A stretch of 64,000 bases of DNA from Podarcis melisellensis. Its lineage: Eukaryota. Made by a program: the position numbers and the translations under genes. Below the pieces are notes generated by a model. The model was not told the origin of the DNA, ran no database searches, and was given only the letters and a program-made list of their open reading frames with translations. Within the stretch, counting starts at the first letter, position 1. Every line of letters starts with the position of its first letter. Location of the stretch: NCBI GenBank assembly GCA_964234715.1, contig OZ174276.1; one strand, given 5' to 3'. Of the stretch, positions 9,301 through 62,584 are shown one piece after another.

Positions 9301-12300
9301 AACCTGTGTAGATTATTTTAAAGCTCGCACTTTGAGTACATTTTAGTGCATGCATTATATAAATCATTAACACGTACATTAACTGTCTGTACCTCATTAG
9401 TGTAGTCCATAGCACTATGAGATTTTAATGATTTCGTTAAATCAAGTTATTATACATACTATACACCCAGGTGCTGTGATCCAACAACTCATTTGGCATA
9501 CAAAGGCTCCAGTATACGCACAGAGCTCTTTGTGTGCAGAGGCCTATTATCTTCTAGGAGGCAAGGAATATTCTATATTCAGACAGGTAAAGGTGCATGG
9601 TATATATTCATAGCATTCCTCAACTCATAGAAAAGAAGAAGAAGAAGGCAAAAGTAATGGGCAGCTGGGAAAGGATGAGTCTTACCTCTTTGACCACCCT
9701 GTAATTATAGCTACTAGTGCTTTCGGGTTTCCGCGATTTGCTGTGGCCTTCCTAGGGGACAAGCAAGATTTATTAATTTATTACATTCCCCTCCCGCCCA
9801 CCCCCAATTCTGGTGATCATTAGTACAAATTCTAGCAGCTATTTCACACCAAAAAATCTCCAGAAGTTTTAAAACTTCTACCAACCTTTCTCCCTTCACC
9901 AATATTCAGTTTTAACACAAACTTAACAGCGGTATTGTCGGAACATGCCTGGGGGGCACATGCAGCCCCCGGAATGAGACAGGCCTCTCCGGGCATCTTC
10001 CTGATGAAGCGCAGCCCGGGACATTCACAAATCAGTTCCGATGCACACAAGTGGCACATATCAAAAGACATGTGCACGCTCATTCAACAGAGTATAGCAG
10101 AAACCATTGTGGAGTGTGAGTGTAAGCACTCTAAGTGATTTATTAAGCAATATATACAGGACAAAGTAACTATGGCGTCCTCTCACTTCTTCTCCAAGAG
10201 AGAGAGAGAGAGAAAGGAAGTACAAAAGTACAGCACAGTGGAAGAGAGATAAGACTGACTTCCGTTCTCACACTTTCCAAGCCTAGAAAGTAAACACTGA
10301 CATGTGATGTAACAATCACACATCCAGCTACAGAGGAGTGAAATGCTAACAGGTATTTCTATAGTGAGTCTTCACAAATTATCAAGTCACACACCCGTGC
10401 TATTTACCTAAGGCCCCCTACCCAATTCATTTAAATGGATAAATCTTATAGCAGCACAATAATATAACTGCAGCATTCAAAAAAAATACTAGTTACATTA
10501 AAGGCACAATATGATTAGTGGTACTGCTTGCAAGTAAACAGTGAAGAGATATTACACATATGTACACTGTGTTATTGGTCTTTTATTCTAAATTTTAGTT
10601 TAATGTGAATAGCTATGGAAGAGGTGGTTGAGGCATAGGGACAGGGGACAGGGGACGGAGGTTAGAGAAGGCATATATAACATGATGAATGGAACAAAAA
10701 AGGAGACAATCCGATTTTAGGGTTAAAAGCAGCTGGGAAACAGACCAAGAAACCTCTTAGAGGAAATCTTCAGGATTCCCATGAATTAAAAATGAATAAA
10801 TATGTAAATGTAGCTTTAATAATATATTGCACAAACATGAACAACGATACAACTGGCCGGGAGCAGGGGGAATAAACATAAACTGTGGAAAGAGAAAACA
10901 GCAGCAACAACAACAAAGGTGTAAGAAGACGGTGAGAGGGGTGGGAGGAGAAGAGAGGGAAATCAAAATGTTAAAACTATGATTCTAGCATAACTTTGCT
11001 AAAGTCTTTTAGAACTTATGTTTAAAATATAATACTTTTAAGGTTGTGTACAACATTGAAATGTTATTCATGTTAATCAACCCAGTCAACCTTCACAAAA
11101 GCCATCTGAGTTAGTCAATGACATTGTTCTGGAGCATAGGCAGCACACAAAATGAAGACTGCAAGAAAGCAATTTGCCCCAAAGCCACCATTACTTTATA
11201 TAGCTTCAGGCTGAGATGAAATTTGAACTCTCCTGCTCTTGACCACTACGTTACGCCGACAATGCAACGAAGAAAAGCTATTCTTACCTCCTTTTTCTTA
11301 TGTTCATTCTCTCCTGTCGTTACATCCATCGTTTCATCAGGTCCCTGGCCTTTGTACACCCAGAGTTCGGATTTTTCCACAATTGATCTCAACTGATCCA
11401 AATCTTGCTTTATCTGCTTGTAGTTGTCCACATCTTGGCTGGTGACAAGCAGTTGGACCTTACATGAATTGCAATCCATTAGTTGCATAACACCCTTGCA
11501 TCATCACACAAATTTAGAGTGAAAGTGTGGACGGTATAGAACACTACATTTACCTGTTTAAAGGCCTGAAGGACTTCTTGCCTCTGACTAAAGTGCCTAA
11601 AGAGTAGCTGAAGGGCTCCAGACACGAGAGGAGGATAGTCGTGCATTGTTAAATGGAGTAATACTCTAAGGAAAGTTCTGCCACCATGATCATCCAAATC
11701 CAGCGGTGTATTCTCTTCACTGAAAATAATAAAAATATATAGAGTAAAATTGGGGTGGGGGGTGGGGAGGAAATGGTTCCCTTTAAGAACTTCCAGGCAG
11801 CTTCCATAACTGTGTTAGTCTATCTGATGTTGGGAAAGGAACCAGAAACCACCACAAATTCAAATACGGTGGTACCTTGGTTTTCGAACGTCTCCGTTGA
11901 CAAACACACCTCGGAAGTCGAACAAGCCATGCAGCTTCCGCTGAGGCCTAGCTGTTGGCTATTGTGTTTTCGGCTTTCAAACGTTTCAGAACTCAAACAG
12001 TCTTCCGGAACGGATTATGTTCAAAAGCTGAGGTATCACTGTACAATGTAAGCTACCAGTGGCAATGGAGGAAGGGCACCCTTTTTCATATTAGAATCAT
12101 AAAACTGTGGAGATGGATGGGACCCAGAGGATCATCTAGTCCCATGGTTCCCAACATGAGGCACACGCCCCACAGGAGGGCAATTTGATAGCTTTTAAAG
12201 ATCAAGGTAATGGCCTTTTAGGCCTCCTCCATATGGAGTTCACTTTCTGAATAATAAAAATTATATGTCACCGGGGGGGTGGGGGAGGGGGGCATCAGGA

Positions 12301-15300
12301 TTTTAGAGATGCTTAAGTGCGGCATGGCCAAAAAAAAGGTTGGGAACCACTGATTTAGTCCAACTCCCTGTAATGCAGCAATCTCACCAACTCACCACCA
12401 CGATCATATGTGGAGGAGCCCTTCACCTCTTCGTTTATTCTCTTGAAACTTAGCAACACCCTAAAAATGTATTTACCTTTCTCTAACTAATCTAGACCAA
12501 GGTGGGAGATTTGTGGCTTTTCAGATGTTTCTGGACTGCCAACTCTTATGAACCCCAACAAACAGGGATGGTGGGAGTTGTAGTCCAGCAACATCCATGA
12601 TATCGACACTTTTTTTAAAAAGAGCAGCCCTCATCATAGTTACTCTTTCTCTAGGCTTCCCTCCACAGCTAATACCTTGGATTCCGCAAAGTCTTCCCCC
12701 CTTTTGCCATTCTGAAAACATTATTTGTTTAAAAGTTATTTTCCCCCTAATGGCCTTTAAATTATGTCCTGCATTTCGGCAAACACTAGCAAGGCTGTCC
12801 GACCCGGCAGTGCTACCCAATCATTGGCAAACTCTCTTCCTCCCGTGAGTTAAAAGTGTATTTCTTTGATTTACATTCTTCTTCATTTTAGGAGTACGTA
12901 TCTATCCCATTGGGGACACGGGTGGCACTGTGAGTTAAACCACAGAGCCTAGGACTTGCCGATCAGAAGGTCGGCGGTTTGAATCCCCGTGACGGGGTGA
13001 GCTCGCATTGCTTGGTCCCTGCTCCTGCCAACCTAGCAGTTTGAAAGCACGTCAAAGTGCAAGTAGATAAATAGGTACCGCTCTGGCGGGAAGGTAAACG
13101 GCGTTTCCGTGCGCTGCTCTGGTTCGCCAGAAGCGGCTTAGTCATGCTGGCCACATGACCCGGAAGCTGTACGCCGGCTTCCTCGGCCAGTAAAGCAAGA
13201 TGAGTGCCACAACCCCAGAGTCGGTCACAACTGGACCTAATGGTCAGGGGTCCCTTTACCTTTATCTATCCTATTAAATATTCTGGGTGACATTTAGCAA
13301 TGACTGCTTGCTTGCACCACCAAAATCTGTTGTACAACAGGACATCCAGTTTTTATTCTTCCCCCTCCAGCCCCTACATGCCCCCTACATTGGTTCCAGG
13401 GGGTCCACCCCACCCATGCTCCTGGGCAGATTCTAGGGTTGCACTGGGAACTGAAGCAGGGAGAAGAGGAAGGAGATATCGTGTTGAACAAGCAGCTGCT
13501 ATACTGTATCACACCCCTGTTCTCCTGTATGGTATTCTTAACACCCACACACCCCACAAACAGACACCCCTACCCCCTGTGCAGGGGAGGGGGACAGACA
13601 ATGGGGTCATGAAACCATAGCTGCAAGAATACAGTTTACCTCAGTCTGCCCTCTCATTTAGTAAGTACCTCAGGAAACATACATGGATAATTCTTTTAAC
13701 TCATTCATGGTAATTAAAGTAACAATTAGTGTATGAGCAAATGGGTACATGAATGATTAGTGCAAGTGACTTGCTCCTCTGAAGAACTGTGGCCTGCAAC
13801 GGTCCAGAAGCAGTTTCACATACAGTTCAGAACAGACGAATGCAAATCGAAATAGTTTACTTTCCTGCCTCCAAATATCCCTTCTGCTTGCTCTTCAATG
13901 TGTTCAAAGTCAAGAGCTCCTGTAAAGGAAAACAAACAGTTTTGTCTTCTATGCCAAGCTGAAAATATAGCTTAAAATTCATTAAGGGGAGCAGAGGAAG
14001 CAAGCTACCATTCTTTCCATCACAGAAACTACACTATAAGAATCCTCTGCTGAAAGGCAAGGAAATCCTCTGTGAAATAAGATCCAAAAGGTTGTTTTTC
14101 GATCCAATTGTATAAATTTAATCCAGTTGGCATCCATTTCAGTTGTATGGGCAACTACTGTGTGAAGCTGTTTCAAACTATACAGTAGAATATGCGAGGG
14201 TATTGTGTGCATGCAAACTTATGCCTGCATCTGTACACAAACACACAATATTTAAAGGCAGCCTTGGATTTTTCCAGAGGAGCAGTATAGCAATTTGTGA
14301 CGCCTCCACCTTACATAGTTTCAAAGGGAACTTATGTCTTCCATAGTGTGAGACTGTGCACATATGATTTATTTATTAAACTTTCTTTTTGGAAATAAAA
14401 GTTTAAAAATGAAACAAATAGTGCAAAGGATAAGCTCAATAACTATGCATACTGATAATCTTTGTACTTTATTCCTCCTTTGTATTTTCTTCACGGTGTT
14501 TTCTTTACAGGAATTTTCCTCACAGGGTTTCAAGATGTGGAGGTAACTAATGACATCCACAATCTAGAGCAGTGTTTCCCAAAATTAATAAAGTTATTAT
14601 AGTCTGATAGCATATTATTGTATCTTGCCTAATTAAGAAAAACAAAACCCACATGGACAATGGAATGGCTGTTTTCCTGCTTTTATTCACAAATGGTTCA
14701 ATAAGTCATTATTGAGGGAATATACCAAGTGGCACATACCGGCACCTAAGAAAATTTTCACAGCACTTTAAGAGAACGTGTTGTAACTGACCTGGTACAT
14801 TTGGCATTTCTTGGTTATTGCTTCCTGTAGGTGAATCAGGTGTCTGTGCGTTGCTTTCATCAAACTCATGTTTAAATATGCACAGAAGGCATGAGATTCT
14901 ATAATCCAATCTCACATTCAAAATGAACTGATGATTCCATAGTGTTTTTAAAAAGGGAAAAAAAGAAAAAGAAGCTTCAATAGCACAACTCATTACCTCC
15001 CCCTTTTGCGTTTTTAATATACGATATATACGATATACGATATCTTTATTGTCATTGTCCCATGCAGACAATTTTGCGTTTTTAAAAGCAAGGACCTTCC
15101 CTTTCACGTCCTTAAAGCATGCATTTAAAATATATTAGATACTGAAAGTAACTCCTGCCATGAAAACCCAAATCTACCGGTCTAGTTTGTATTATATATT
15201 ATAGATGCATATTGTGTCTAGACAAAAACATACACAAAACAAAACAAAACACATACCACCTTTTTCAAAACAACACAATATAGCAGATTTTTTTTTCTGT

Positions 15301-18300
15301 TGTAGCTAAGTAAAAATAAGAAGATGGTCATTCTGGGTATTTCCAATGTGTTTTAATTCATATTGGCAGCATCAGTCAGTTTTACCCTTTCAGTTCATGC
15401 TTATACATTTCAGCAAGTTAAGCAATAAATCTGTATAAGCATAACTAGGGAATGCTCATGAAGCCCAGTTCTGGGTACCCTAACTGGCAGCAGCTCCTCA
15501 GGGTTTTGAGCAGAGAGTTCCCTATGACCTGATGTTTTAGCTGCAGAATGTCAGAAAATGAACCTGAGGCCTTCCACTTTCAAAAAAATGTACTTTATCC
15601 ACTGAACTACAGTCCCTTCCTCATGACATTTATCTAAGAGTAGCACAGGCTATAGAGCAGACACAAAAAGTTTCAGTTTCCTTCTAATTTATAATATATT
15701 TTTTTCAGTAGTTATCCTAGGGCTATGCACTCTGACCCAGAAACCTTGCCCCAGTTCCAGATGGGTAGATGGGTTGATGAAAATGCACAGCACACTGAAT
15801 GTCAGACAGCCTATTGCAAAGCCATAGCTTTCAAAATAGGATCTGCAGTGGAACTCAAACAAAGCCTTGGAAATACTGTCATGGGAGCATTGCAGCTTTC
15901 TGAACACCTCCACTGGATTGCTCTGCTCCAACTCTCCTGAACAATATCTGTACAGTGGTGCCCCGCAAGACGAATGCCTCGCAAGACGAAAAACCCGCTA
16001 GACGAAAGGGTTTTCCGTTTTGGAGGCGCTTCGCAAAACGAATTTCCCTATGGGGTTGCTTTGCAAGACGAAAAAAATCTTGCATCCCCCCACAGGTTTT
16101 TTTCGCTTTTTTCGCCCTTTTCTTAAGCCGCTAAGCCGCTTATCAGCTGTTCCGCTGATAAGCCGCTTAACAGCTGATCGCTGGAAGCTGCTAGACAGCT
16201 GTAGCGCTAAGCCGCTAAGCTGTCAATGGGCTTGCTTCGCAAGACGAAAAAACCGCTATACGAAAAGCCTCACGGAACGGATTAATTTCGTCTTGCGAGG
16301 CACCACTGTATTTCAATCTGACTGCTCAATGTATTATAGGAGCTGGGTTATTTGAAGTTACCTTGCACGGAAAAGTTTTAAAGTATGTAACTGGTTTTAA
16401 TGGTTATAATGTAACTGGTTTAATGGTTTTAATGTAACTGGTTTTAATGAGGGCATGGGTTAAACATTTGCAACTGTTCACAATGAGTAGTTGTTATTAG
16501 TATTTTGTTGTTAATACCTGCAACAATGTTTATTAATTCTTTTTCTAATGATAATTATTTTAAAAAAACAACAATAAAGCTTACACGCAATCCATCCAGT
16601 GAAAAAATTATTCATTTCTAATTCTGTCAAAAAGAGAACAATGGTCTAGAATGAAAAATCCCCAAACAACATAAGCATGACAGTACAGCTCTTGCGTCAA
16701 TATAGTTTTCTAAGCTATGTCACCTGAAGTATACCTGAAGTATCTCAATGATTTTCAGCTTGGTGTCCATTACCAGGATGTCTTCTTTCTCAGGTTCAAC
16801 CTGTTTCACAGTACCTTCTGGGGCAGCAGCAAGAGGAGTCATGGGCAAGAACCCTCCACCCCTAAGCACAACTTGGGTCATCAGCTCCCCAACACCGTGG
16901 ATAGATCTCATCACATTGCTCCCTTCAGAGAGACAATACAGGATAAAGTTTTGTAATACAGTAATTAAGGTAAGACCTGTCTCAGCATTACCTGTCTCAG
17001 CCTATTACACACATTACTGTATAGCGGAATCAGATTTAATGTGTTCCTGCTTCTTATCTATCAGATGCAACATGCGCAACCTACGAACTGCAAATATAAC
17101 GTATTTGTGGTATTCTGCTATTTATTAAAATGCTTTGAGATCACCCTTCATCTGCAGAGATACAAAATGGGCATGCAAAGGCAGAGAAAAATAAAACAAA
17201 CAAATCCGATATAATACAATTAAGGATACAACATTGTTATAAAAATTCTACATGCTGTGAAATAGGCAACACCTTCCACACTTACAGAAAGTAGCAGGAA
17301 CATTTAATGGATACTGTGTTGTACGAAGCAATTTCTATTCCAGGTTGTAGTTATAAGAGCAGTTACTTTAAGAACTGGGACCTGTTTTTTTCTCCTCTTC
17401 CTTCTCCAACCCTTTCTCCTTGTGTGACATATCTTTTACACTGTAAGCCTAAGGGCAGGGACTGCCTTACTAGTGATTTTTGTAAGGTGCACTGAAAGCC
17501 TTTTCAGTGGGGCACCAATGCATTAAATAAAGAAACAAACCCTACCACTATATCATATTGAGGGGAAATCTACATATTACATGCAACATGGGAGTTGCCC
17601 CCAAAATTTGCATCCTTATACTTTATTCTTCCTCTCCCCTGACCATGTGAAACAATGGCACAAGAAATGGATCTTTATCTGCCTCTCCTGTCCCATACTA
17701 TGCACTTCGAAAATCTACTCCAGAGGTTCCTTCAGCCCTCCGGAGCAGATTTTGAGATTACATGGAGGGCTGATGGTTGGGGAAGAGCAAGGTAAAAATA
17801 TGTTGCACCATTCAGATAGTGTTGGATGCATCCCACTGATAACACCTGGGAACAGTTGCAAGCCAGGTATAAATGAGATGCTGAAGGTTGCACAACAGGT
17901 ATAAATGAGATGGCATGCATTTTGTGCCACCAGCTCATATGCTCAGTCCACATTCAATCATGCAGTTGCAAGCTCATGAGCATATGCACATGTTAATAAT
18001 GTGCATTGACAAGGCTGGGTGATGGCGGTTTTTCAATATCACCAGCCAAACATCACGGTCTGGCAACGTACCGCAATGTTGAAAAAACAAGCCACATTGG
18101 CCTCAGCCTGTGAGGTGCTGGGTGCAATTGCCACAGCAATCACCATGGGCACTGAGGCAGTTTCACCCCAGGGCCTGGTCTCCTTGCTCACGGACAAGTG
18201 GGAAAAGTACCGGGTATTTCTTGCGCGTCTCTGCCGGGGATGGGGACGGCTCCCCATCTCTAGCAGAGCCATCCCCGGTGCTCTCCCCATTTGGATGGGA

Positions 18301-21300
18301 GCCAGTGCCGGGCTGGGGTATCATTTAACTGCTTGGCTGAGGGGAGCAGCAGCCGCACACTTCTCAGCCAAGCACTTTAATGATGCAGAGGAAGGAACAA
18401 GCTGTACCGGCACCTCGTGGATGCAGCTTTTTTCTCCCTCTGTGCAGTATGATGTATGATGATATATCACTGGTGAAACCGCCACCGTTCCTGAGTCCCT
18501 CTGCTAGCAATGCTCACTGGAGGAAGTCGCTAGTAGAGGGACTCGGGAGCGGTGGCGGTTTCACCAGTGATATAGCTGACATTGCGGTCTGCTCCTCATA
18601 TATTGATATATCACCCAGGCCTAGAACTGACTGTTTCTTTGGCTGGCACAGCCTGAGAGCAAAGGAGAAGCCATGAGAAAAATTCAGAAGCCACGTGAAA
18701 CTCAAACTCCTGTGAGTATTGTCTGCAACCTGGAGCATCAAACTACCACCATCATTAACCAGAGGAACCTTGTCAAATACGGATGGAATAGGTGTTCCCC
18801 ACACCTGACGTTCATGATAAGAGGCCTCTACGATAGGAGTAAGTCAGGAGGAACAGTGCTAGATTGCCTATCTTTTACAATTTACAAGCCTGCTTCCCCC
18901 ACTCCTTAACACAGGCTGACAAAAACGAATGGCACCGACAGAGACCAATCATTCTTCAATAGCATGTTTTTCTTCCTCTATGCTCCATGGCCATTCATAC
19001 CTTTACTCTCTTCTCCTTTTGCAACCTTTGTGATAGGAAAGATCGTAGCAACATGGACACAGTCCAAAATAGCTAGGAGGATTTTTGTTAGCCTGAGCAG
19101 GTCACAGAAGTTGTAGAAGCCAAAATAGATCAGGTTTCGGGCCAAGTTTACCACCTATTGTTTTAAAAAGAAACAAAAAATGGTTTGTTACAATTTCTAT
19201 GATATGTACCAAAGCACCTGAATATTGACTTTCTGGCACCCACTATTCAAAGGAGCCAGTGTGGTACACTGGTAGACTTCAACCGTGGAGATGAAGCTGA
19301 GTGGAAGATCTCAGGCTAGTTACTAATTCTAAGCCTATCTCATATGACTGGGCCACTGGGAGCATTAAAAGTTGGTAACACCCTGAATACCACCCTGAGC
19401 TGCTTGGAAGAACAGGATGCAGCTATCCTTTATTTTTCAGAATATATAATCATAACACACCATGCTGTACGACTTCACTATACCTTGTTGTCATAATAAA
19501 CATAATTTTCTGTATTTTAATAAGCATTCTACTGTGTTTTACTGCATATACAGATGTATTATATACAGAAACTGAATATTCTGGATTTAAATCTGCCAGT
19601 TCATATTTTTTACATTTTTTTACCATTGATTTTTGGACACCAACCTAAGGCAGTGCTTTTTCAGAGCGCTTTTCTCAATATTTCGTAACAGATCTCCTGC
19701 AATTGTTTCTGTGGGCTTTTCTGCTTTTTAATGACTTGCTATTCTTTTTGGTCTTTTTTTGTATAGTTTCACTTATTATTGTTGTGCTTTGCCTGTCTTA
19801 GTGTAAGGAAGTTCCATCTGTTGATACTATTAGTCCAACTATGTGGGCAATTTAGGATTAGCTCCAGCATGAGTTAGCATCTACTGTATTCAGAGGTCTT
19901 GCAACTCAGCTTTATTTTTTTTAAAAAAGATATTTACCTCAAAGGTGAGTTTATTTTTTTCTTTGTCAGAGAAAGGAAATCTCTGACAGACAACATCTCT
20001 TAAATATTCCTCAACGAAGTCCATGGTTTGTGAAAACCGCTCCTTGATTTCATCTTTGGAAGTTCCACTGCTATCATAGCTGAAGAAATTAAACAAAAAA
20101 CTTCAAATGGGTGAATGCCATAGGTAACTTATGGTTCTTTTCCTTTTCTTGAGTCAGTCAGAAAGTACACAGAAAACTGTCTTATGCCGAGTCAGACCAC
20201 TGGTCCATCTAGCTCCATTCTGTAACATATTTTTAGCATATTATTTTTTTAAAAAAATGTGGCTCCTGGAGCAAGCATTCCTGCTTTCCAAAAGCCAGCC
20301 ACCAAGCAGTCACTCCTGACATTCCTGAAAACGGTCTCACAGTAGGACTGCTCCAAGGCATTGTGCAAAGGAGCGAAAAAGCATCTAGGTATTTGATAGC
20401 CCTCATTTCAGAGAACCATTTGATCACAAAATACTCACTCATCGATTGCAATTTCAGAAGGAATCTCTGACCACAACCGGGCATATTTTACTGGTGTCAC
20501 TTGTTCTTGGGGATCTCGGTCAACGTGCATATGCAGCATCAGCCGGCAGAAGGACGCTCTCAAGTCATAAGGCAAATTTTCGTCGGACATGCAGCGAAGG
20601 ATGAGATCTACATCTAGCTGGCCAGATATTTCATTTATAGCCAAGTACTGCCGATCAAGGCACATCCTAGCAAAAAGATTCAGCTGGTACCTTTGGGAGT
20701 TAGGAGAGAAGGAGAAGAGTATCATTTTGCTTGCCTGGGACTGAAAATTAGAAGATACCTCAGAAGGAACAATACAATGCATATTCTGATGCAGCAGCAG
20801 AAATAACACTTCTTCAGGAACAGAAGTACATTAGCAGTCCATGGGAGGATAAATTTCTCACTTCTGGACCCATTACATACATACATACATACATACACAC
20901 ACACACAAACACACACACATATATATAATCTGCATATAATTAAACATTACTATCATTTCTTTAAATCCAATTTGAAAAATATCCCAGATGAACTGCTGAT
21001 GAACCTTTAAAAAAACAATGTATTTTATGTACGTATTTTAGAAATTTGGACAAGTTCCACCAAACAAACATGAAGCCTCCAAACAATTTTAAGGAGTTTA
21101 TAATACAAAAGTAGATTTGAACAACCAATTTTGCCTCAGTGAAAAATGCCGCTTGATTGTAAAGAACCAATATCACAGCTGTATGAAACTGGTGTTACGG
21201 AAAGCATCATTTGAGAGCTATCTCTTTAACCAATTATATAAATTAACCTTGAAGTCTTCTAGAAGCTGGTTAACATTACAAATAGCTAGAGTCAGTTGTC

Positions 21301-55638: not shown

Positions 55639-56002
55639 GGGACGCGGGTGGCACTGTGGTCTAAACCACTGAGCCTCTTGGGTTTGCCGATTGGAAGGTC
55701 GGCGGTTCAAATCCCCACGACAGGGTGAGCTCCTGTCGCTCGGTCCCTGCTCCTGCCAACCTAGCAGTTCAAAAGCACGTCAAAGTGCAAGTAGATAAAT
55801 AGGTACCACTCCGGCAAGAAGGTAAACGGCATTTTCGTGCGCTGCTCTGGTTTTGCCGGAAGTGGCTTAGTCATGCTGGCCACATGACCCGGAAAAACTG
55901 TCTGCAGACAAACGTCAGCTCCCTCGGCCAGTAAAGCGAGATGAGCGGCGCAACCCCAGAGTCGTCTGCGACTGGACTTAACTGTCAGGTGTCCTTTACT
56001 TT
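55639..56002 (+). mobile_element. Sauria SINE, full length
   Basis: GGGACGCGGGTGGCACTGTGG head; TSD TAAATAATACCT / TAAATAGTACCT. Confidence 0.93.
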
Positions 56003-61204: not shown

Positions 61205-61498
61205 GTGGTTCGAATCCCCACGAAGGGGTGAGCTCCCGTTGTTCAGTCCCTGCTCCTGCCAACCTAGCAGTTCGAAAGCAGTTCAAAGTGCAAGTAGATA
61301 AATAGGTACCACTCCGGCGGGAAGGTAAATGGCGTTTCCATGCGCTGCTCTGGTTGTGCCAGAAGCGGCTTAGTCATGCTGGCCACATGACCCAGAAGCT
61401 GGCCAGCTCCCTCGGCCAGTAAAGCGAGATGAACTCCGCAACCCCAGAGTCGGCCACGATTGGACCTAATGGTCAGGGGTCCCTTTACCTTTACCTTA
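61205..61498 (+). mobile_element. Sauria SINE, 5'-truncated near the B box
   Basis: GGTTCGAATCCC start; conserved body; ACCTTT tail. Confidence 0.9.
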
Positions 61499-62584
61499 CT
61501 ATAGGTTATTGGTGGTTTGTTTGTTTGACAAACTGTTAGCCACCAGATGACATTAGGATAAAAGACTGAAAGATAATTCTATATGTGTCTATTCAAAAGT
61601 AGAAATGAACAAATCTATGCATTTTGGTTTCTCTCAGTTTTAAAGTACTGTACAGTTTACCTCACTTTTTTCCATCAGTGGACAAACTTCATTGAAATAA
61701 AGAAAAACCTGCATGAAAAATTATACTCATTCTCATGAACGTTTTACAAGCCATTCCACCTATTATTTTTGCCTGCTATTTCCCCAATATATACGGTTGG
61801 ATGCTTTTTGTTGCTGGAAAACTGCATTACAATATCCAAAGCATCGCTGTGCAAAGAGCAAAATTGACAGGTCAACTGACATCAAAATGCAAACCAAGAG
61901 AACTTCTGCTTCATCCCACATTATTTTTATTATGTATTTTGTGCTTTTATATCTTTATTATGTGAACTGCCCTGAGACCCCCAGGTATAGGGCGGTATAT
62001 AAATTCAATAAATCATCATCATCTCCTCTACACAGAAGCAAGTCCTGCTGAATTCAACAGGGTTTCCTCTTGGGGGAAACGGGTAGAGAACTGTATCCTG
62101 AATAAGCTAAATTAGCATGAAGTGTGTGAGCAACGGAAAGGGCAGAAGGAGAACAGGAAACAGAAACTCTTGCACTGGATGTTCCACCACTTGTTTTCTT
62201 GCTGTTAGTGTTTTAGAGAACTAACAAGGTCCTCCTACTTCAAAAGCAGTCCACCAGGACTGTATCAGCAGTGACATTTGATATCTCATTCTACACCGTA
62301 CCGTGCCAATTTCTGTTCGCTACCACAGAAGAAAACTGGCTCCCTATTAAAATGCCACCATCTGATATTAGGCCTCCCACGGAAAAGGTTTTCTTCCAGG
62401 CAAAAGAAAATCTCAAAATTTAAAGCCAGAAACTTGACTTATTACTGAAGCTGTTTGCAAAAATTAATTGACCCCTGAGCTTCAAGCACAAGTTTTAGCT
62501 TTTAATCCTCCCGTTTTAATCCTACGCCGTTTAGCTAAAATCTGATTTCCTATCTAAAAACCTACATTTTCCTTAAAAGCAATG

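What the first reader, a model, noticed from the sequence alone, without database searches (positions are those of the whole stretch)
11720..13864. Non-canonical GA-AG intron in ITPR1 (donor AG|GAAAGT)
Seen: exon w22 ends GGA GGC AG and exon w23 begins T GAA GAG AAT. The conserved protein GIFGG-S-EENTP therefore requires a donor reading GAAAGT, which is the U1 consensus AG|GTAAGT with only +2 changed T>A. The nearest GT (4 nt downstream, AAA|gtaaac) spliced to the same acceptor gives AGG AAA TGA, an immediate stop and a potential NMD switch. Pairing that GT with a GAG acceptor 7 nt downstream gives an in-frame variant GG-RK-NTP, which annotation pipelines may wrongly choose. Established: functional GA donors exist (FGFR genes) but are very rare. 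I recall a GA-AG site reported in human ITPR1 but cannot verify it here. If correct, this lizard sequence shows deep conservation of a suboptimal donor.
Basis: partly seen in the sequence, partly recalled or inferred. Interest (0 to 1): 0.75.

Follow-up and report, generated by a model that had tools for sequence, protein, structure and literature searches.

The report
Known GA-AG intron of ITPR1, lizard copy
The lizard calcium-channel gene ITPR1 has an intron that starts with GA instead of the usual GT, at the same place as an already published and validated human oddity, so it is real but not new.

Summary
On the minus strand a 55-nt ITPR1 exon ends ...GGC AG at 13865. The intron (13864..11720, 2145 nt) begins GAAAGTAAAC and ends ...TTTTCAG. 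The next exon starts T GAA GAG AAT at 11719. Only this GA-AG pairing gives the conserved ...IFGG-S-EENTP... seen in solved mouse/rat ITPR1.

This is the orthologue of human ITPR1 intron 24. Parada et al. [quoted passage not shown] The TOGA2 preprint (2026) calls it a non-canonical U2 intron.

The donor matches the U1 consensus at 8 of 9 positions. Predicted U1 pairing is -9.0 kcal/mol, against -3.2 for the GT four bases downstream. No U12 motifs are present.

New here: four compact ITPR1-like loci (unlabelled, probably teleost), one invertebrate-like locus and one ITPR3-like locus share the intron position and phase but carry ordinary GT donors. GA is therefore a derived state shared by human and lizard, not pan-vertebrate.

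The proposed NMD switch remains speculation. Verdict: real, already known, low interest.

The parts
13865..13919 (-). 55-nt ITPR1 coding exon that ends ...GGA GGC AG (phase 2); it supplies the first two bases of the Ser codon
   Evidence: the frame agrees with mouse ITPR1 1031-1044.
13857..13867 (-). Non-canonical 5' splice site CAG|GAAAGTAA (positions -3 to +8). It matches the consensus at every position except +2 (A13863)
   Evidence: U1 duplex -9.0 kcal/mol, 9 bp with one mismatch
13859..13860 (-). It lacks both -1G and +5G
   Evidence: -3.2 kcal/mol; stop codon with acceptor 11719; GG-RK-NTP with acceptor 11712
11720..13864 (-). GA-AG intron, 2145 nt, orthologous to human ITPR1 intron 24 (1967 nt)
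   Evidence: human data
11722..11749 (-). U2-type 3' signals: candidate branch site TTTAC (A at -26, about 11745) followed by a 77% pyrimidine tract. There is no U12 branch motif
11720..11721 (-). Canonical AG acceptor (..TTTTCAG|T)
   Evidence: The AG|T arrangement is conserved in every ITPR1-like read-through ORF
11713..11714 (-). AG inside the exon (TGAAGAG|AAT) that a GT-only aligner or annotator could take as the acceptor
   Evidence: the analogous human misannotation is described
11554..11719 (-). Downstream ITPR1 exon, T + 55 codons (EENTP...AFKQ), followed by a normal CAG|GTAAAT donor

Best explanation
This is the lizard orthologue of the known constitutive GA-AG, U2-type intron of ITPR1 (human intron 24). 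U1 snRNA probably recognises the site in the normal register, because every donor position other than +2 is consensus (CAG|GAAAGUAA). Cleavage occurs before G13864 and the intron is joined to the ordinary AG at 11720, producing the Ser codon AG|T and the conserved ...IFGG-S-EENTP.... The GA state is derived. The same intron, at the same position and phase, has GT in ITPR1-like loci that are probably teleost, in an invertebrate-like homologue and in an ITPR3-like paralogue. Shown here: the sequence, the gene identity, the uniqueness of the GA-AG solution, the human precedent from the literature, and GT in the other lineages. Inferred: actual use of the junction in lizard RNA, and the idea that strong pairing at +3 to +7 compensates for the +2 mismatch.
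For: Sequence. Gene identity: the downstream exon is 100% identical to ITPR1 1045-1099 at 109 bits, against 88 for ITPR2 and 77 for ITPR3. Mouse ITPR1 reads ...IFGGSEENTP... across the junction. Only GA(13865)-AG(11719) reproduces this; the canonical in-frame alternatives delete or replace conserved residues. [quoted passage not shown] U1 pairing is -9.0 kcal/mol for the GA site, -3.2 for the GT site, -6.6 to -8.1 for the GT donors of the probably teleost loci, and -8.3 for the next donor of this gene. The S-E-E codons after the acceptor are kept as coding, with synonymous differences, in L001-L004.
Against: No raw-read check of base 13863 was made. The organisms behind L001-L007 are unlabelled, so 'teleost' is an inference from two paralogue groups and 60-90 nt introns. 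The human donor context GAAAGT is deduced from Parada's description of the misalignment, not read from sequence.
Confidence: 0.9

Rival explanations
1. The lizard does not use the GA donor. It splices from the GT at 13860 to the AG at 11713/11714 and makes a protein with GG-RK-NTP in place of GG-SEE-NTP.
For: Both sites are canonical dinucleotides and the product is in frame. Such a model was once annotated for human.
Against: In human this model was shown to be an alignment artefact. The GT site lacks -1G and +5G and pairs with U1 at only -3.2 kcal/mol. S-E-E is conserved in mouse, in the probably teleost loci and in the invertebrate-like homologue, and its codons are kept as coding.
Confidence: 0.04
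2. Assembly or sequencing error: the true base at 13863 is T and the donor is an ordinary GT.
For: The probably teleost orthologues have GT.
Against: The human orthologue has the same rare GA at the same position. An error that reproduces exactly that state is very unlikely. Three runs of the same organism hold 0.90-0.93 of the sampled words of the region, though this is not position-specific.
Confidence: 0.02
3. The intron is U12-type (minor spliceosome), as it was once filed in U12DB.
For: U12DB listed the human intron as U12, according to the TOGA2 authors.
Against: The donor is GAAAGT, not RTATCCTT. There is no TCCTTRAY branch motif in the last 60 nt, and a pyrimidine tract is present. intronIC and Parada's scoring class the human intron as U2.
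Confidence: 0.01
4. In addition to the main GA use, the GT at +5/+6 is a regulated leak that joins to 11719, creates AGG AAA TGA and sends part of the transcripts to nonsense-mediated decay.
For: Reading frame only. Non-canonical sites are often involved in alternative splicing, 76% in Parada et al..
Against: The GT is simply the +5/+6 of the consensus and pairs very weakly with U1 as a donor. The papers read report no such isoform for human ITPR1. No RNA data were obtained here.
Confidence: 0.08

Closest known systems
Human ITPR1 intron 24, GA-AG U2-type intron (Parada et al. 2014, PMC4176328; TOGA2 preprint 10.64898/2026.06.30.735536)
   Same: Same gene and same codon (Ser between ...IFGG and EENTP, split AG|T). 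Same GA...AG dinucleotides and similar length (2145 versus 1967 nt). The same nearby GT and downstream AG mislead GT-only aligners.
   Different: A different species, with no RNA validation here. In the lizard the misleading acceptor lies 7 nt inside the exon (TGAAGAG|AAT); the human description implies TGAG|.
GA-AG introns of FGFR1-3 (Brackenridge et al. 2003, as summarised)
   Same: A U2-type GA donor with otherwise strong consensus, used efficiently and conserved in evolution.
   Different: The FGFR GA site is an alternative to a canonical GT 6 nt upstream and depends on it. The 50 nt upstream of 13865 contain no GT dinucleotide, and the only GT near the donor is the +5/+6 of its own consensus. 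The ITPR1 site appears constitutive.
BANP GT-GG intron (Parada et al. 2014)
   Same: The same evolutionary pattern: non-canonical in most vertebrates and canonical in fishes.
   Different: In BANP the change is at the acceptor. Here it is at donor position +2.
Genome-wide GA-AG introns of Eurytemora affinis and Oikopleura dioica (Frey and Pucker 2020, PMC7072748)
   Same: A GA donor flanked by an upstream AG and a downstream A.
   Different: Those are thousands of sites per genome, possibly linked to a variant U1. This is a single isolated site in a genome whose other inspected donors are GT.

Membership tests
Orthologue of human ITPR1 intron 24 | The host gene is ITPR1, not ITPR2 or ITPR3 | tested here: met
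   100% identity to ITPR1 1045-1099 at 109 bits, against 88 (ITPR2) and 77 (ITPR3)
Orthologue of human ITPR1 intron 24 | Same position and phase: the Ser codon between ...IFGG and EENTP is split after its second base | tested here: met
Orthologue of human ITPR1 intron 24 | GA at the 5' end and AG at the 3' end | tested here: met
   for the lizard; for human (literature)
Functional U2-type non-canonical (GA-AG) intron | Consensus at the other donor positions and strong U1 complementarity | tested here: met
   8 of 9 consensus positions, -9.0 kcal/mol
Functional U2-type non-canonical (GA-AG) intron | Branch site and pyrimidine tract of U2 type | tested here: met
   TTTAC at -26, 77% pyrimidines. 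This is a simple motif check, not a scored model
Functional U2-type non-canonical (GA-AG) intron | The junction is observed in RNA of this species | not testable with these tools
No listed run was on record as RNA
FGFR-type GA donor (dependent on a neighbouring GT) | A canonical GT donor 6 nt upstream of the GA | tested here: not met
   no GT in the 50 nt upstream of 13865
U12-type intron | Donor RTATCCTT and branch site TCCTTRAY near the 3' end | tested here: not met

The most novel reading that the evidence does not exclude
The T-to-A change at +2 arose once on the tetrapod or amniote stem. It was tolerated because the site gained +5G/+6U: the GT donors of the probably teleost loci read GTAAT or GTAAA and pair with U1 more weakly than the lizard GA site. 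On this reading the retained GA makes splicing of the 55-nt exon rate-limiting, or leaky into a stop-containing isoform, and so tunes ITPR1 dosage.
Probability: 0.08. Interest if true: 0.55.

Novelty: already known. Interest (0 to 1): 0.22.

Why it matters
The main practical point is annotation. GT-only aligners and predictors will mis-model this exon pair in reptile genomes as GG-RK-NTP or as a frameshift, as happened for human. The small addition made here is that the same intron has an ordinary GT in ITPR1-like loci that are probably teleost and in an ITPR3-like paralogue. This makes ITPR1 a clean natural example of a canonical donor that became GA and then stayed so for the time separating human and lizard. 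That could be useful for testing how the spliceosome tolerates +2A.

Tried and rejected

2. Joined spliced model. Full-length annotated ITPR1 proteins were therefore out of reach of the word search (length limits). I could not check how lizard annotations model the junction.

3. The big representative search was not used, because it is costly and the protein is not in question.

4. Contigs for the 100%-identical hits P0001-P0004 and P0028 were not fetched. Their origin cannot be told and a human origin could not be excluded. P0045 matches the solved ITPR2 chain exactly and was avoided for the same reason.

5. ITPR2-like locus L008: the upstream exon is not on the contig, so there is no result for ITPR2.

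6. Searching papers for the run accessions of the fetched contigs gave nothing, so the organisms remain unlabelled.

7. U12 reading: rejected.

8. A-to-I editing of +2A would give GI (read as GG), not GU. I rejected it on established knowledge.

Full report
**Observation.** A short exon (13919..13865, 55 nt) ends ...GGA GGC AG. The following bases are GAAAGTAAAC (G13864, A13863), and the first GT is at 13860/13859. About 2.1 kb downstream the sequence ..TTATTTTCAG (A11721, G11720) precedes T11719 GAA GAG AAT ACA CCG. The downstream exon (11719..11554) ends ...AAA CAG followed by GTAAAT, an ordinary donor.

**Gene identity and required junction.**
- The 55 codons after T11719 are 100% identical to residues 1045-1099 of mouse/rat ITPR1 in solved structures. 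They score 109 bits, against 88 for ITPR2 and 77 for ITPR3.
- An alignment of an invertebrate-like hit to the same solved chain displays the mouse protein across the junction as ...IFGG-S-EENTP.... The Ser codon must therefore be AG from the upstream exon plus T11719.
- I enumerated all GT, GC, GA and AT donors and all AG acceptors within about 25 nt of the two sites. Only GA(13865)-AG(11719) gives this peptide.
- The canonical in-frame alternatives remove or replace conserved residues. GT(13861)+AG(11712) gives GG-RK-NTP. GC(13869)+AG(11714) gives IFG-ENTP. GC(13844)+AG(11719) inserts eight foreign residues (RKVNYFDF) in place of the Ser.

**What is known.**
- Parada et al. 2014 (PMC4176328) describe a GA-AG junction in human ITPR1 whose reads TopHat mis-aligned, with three mismatches, to a nearby GT-AG pair. 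The same error was present in a GENCODE isoform. RT-PCR with Sanger sequencing confirmed the GA-AG junction.
- Their supplementary table lists it as a 1967-nt intron with dinucleotides GAAG, class U2_GTAG, seen in 14 tissues. Their figure legends list ITPR1 among the validated junctions.
- The lizard intron (2145 nt) sits in the same codon of the same gene, so it is the orthologue of a published, validated feature.

**Mechanism.**
- The donor reads CAG|GAAAGTAA. Every position from -3 to +6 other than +2 is consensus.
- Folding the 11-mer against the 5' end of U1 (textbook sequence, pseudouridines written as U) gives 9 base pairs with one mismatch and -9.0 kcal/mol.
- For comparison, the GT at +5/+6 taken as a donor (AAA|GTAAAC) gives -3.2. 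The next donor of this gene gives -8.3, and the GT donors of the other species gathered here give -6.6 to -8.1.
- The 3' end has a TTTAC candidate branch site at -26, a 77% pyrimidine tract, and no U12 donor or branch motif.
- The most likely mechanism is ordinary U1/U2-dependent splicing in the normal register, with the +2A tolerated.
- Unlike the FGFR GA sites, which depend on a canonical GT 6 nt upstream (as summarised), no GT lies in the 50 nt upstream here. This site belongs to the constitutive kind that Parada et al. say the FGFR model does not explain.

**How deep the conservation goes.**
- A word search with the downstream exon alone returned 232 short proteins. Nearly all are read-through ORFs from genomic contigs that start in the intron and continue x-S-EENTP, so the ..AG|T acceptor is general.
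- I fetched contigs only for hits that differ from the mammalian exon.
- Four ITPR1-like loci (L001, L002, L003, and L004/L005) have exons 95-98% identical and introns of only about 60-90 nt. They fall into two sequence groups, as expected for duplicated teleost itpr1 genes. Their organisms are not labelled.
- All four have ordinary donors: AAG|GTAATC, AAG|GTAAAG, AAG|GTAATT and CAG|GTAATC.
- An invertebrate-like homologue (L006, exon SEEC...) has CAG|GTAACA. An ITPR3-like, fish-like locus (L007) has TGG|GTAAGG, with the intron in the same phase.
- The ITPR2-like contig (L008) did not reach the upstream exon.
- The intron position is therefore old, GT is the ancestral state, and GA is a derived state shared by human and lizard. 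Parada et al. describe the same pattern for the BANP acceptor, which is non-canonical in most vertebrates and canonical in fishes.
- The GT donors of these loci lack +5G, whereas the GA site has +5G, +6T and +7A. This suggests, but does not show, compensation.

**What could not be done.**
Work continued beside them.
- There is therefore no junction-read evidence and no raw-read check of base 13863 for this species.
For that reason annotated full-length lizard ITPR1 proteins could not be inspected.
- Contigs behind the 100%-identical hits (P0001-P0004, P0028) were not fetched, because a human origin could not be excluded.

**Verdict.** The feature is the lizard copy of a known, validated GA-AG U2-type intron of ITPR1. 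The NMD-switch suggestion rests on the reading frame alone and on a very weak GT site. The only addition is that GA is derived relative to GT in ITPR1-like loci that are probably teleost, in an invertebrate-like homologue and in an ITPR3-like paralogue. Interest is low. The practical value lies in avoiding mis-annotation.

Noticed in passing
window 12966-13265, 55764-56000, 61267-61578 (minus-strand frames): Three stop-free stretches translate to closely similar peptides (...LWGCG.HLALLAE.A...HVASMTKPL...). One lies inside the GA-AG intron. This looks like an interspersed repeat family scattered through ITPR1 introns.
   Followed up: no
window 10187-10882: An earlier first-reader note (s1-505139) proposes a three-microexon cluster just downstream of the exons studied here. 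I did not examine it.
   Followed up: no
L006:198-518: In this invertebrate-like ITPR homologue the stretch ...[21 protein letters not shown]... is one continuous ORF, whereas the lizard has an intron there (between about 16723 and 15134). So some ITPR introns are lineage-specific, while the intron studied here is shared.
   Followed up: partly
runs X15-X20 (organism F): Six small runs guessed to be RNA hold 0.10-0.11 of the sampled words of window 11200-21199, about the exon share of that stretch. They are the obvious source of junction reads if the stretch beside 13880-13922 can be laid.
   Followed up: no
P0047, P0063, P0065, P0084: These short ENA contig ORFs run straight through ...AEGIFG(S/T)(S/C)EE... 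without an intron. Either some invertebrate lineages lack this intron or the contigs derive from transcripts.
   Followed up: no
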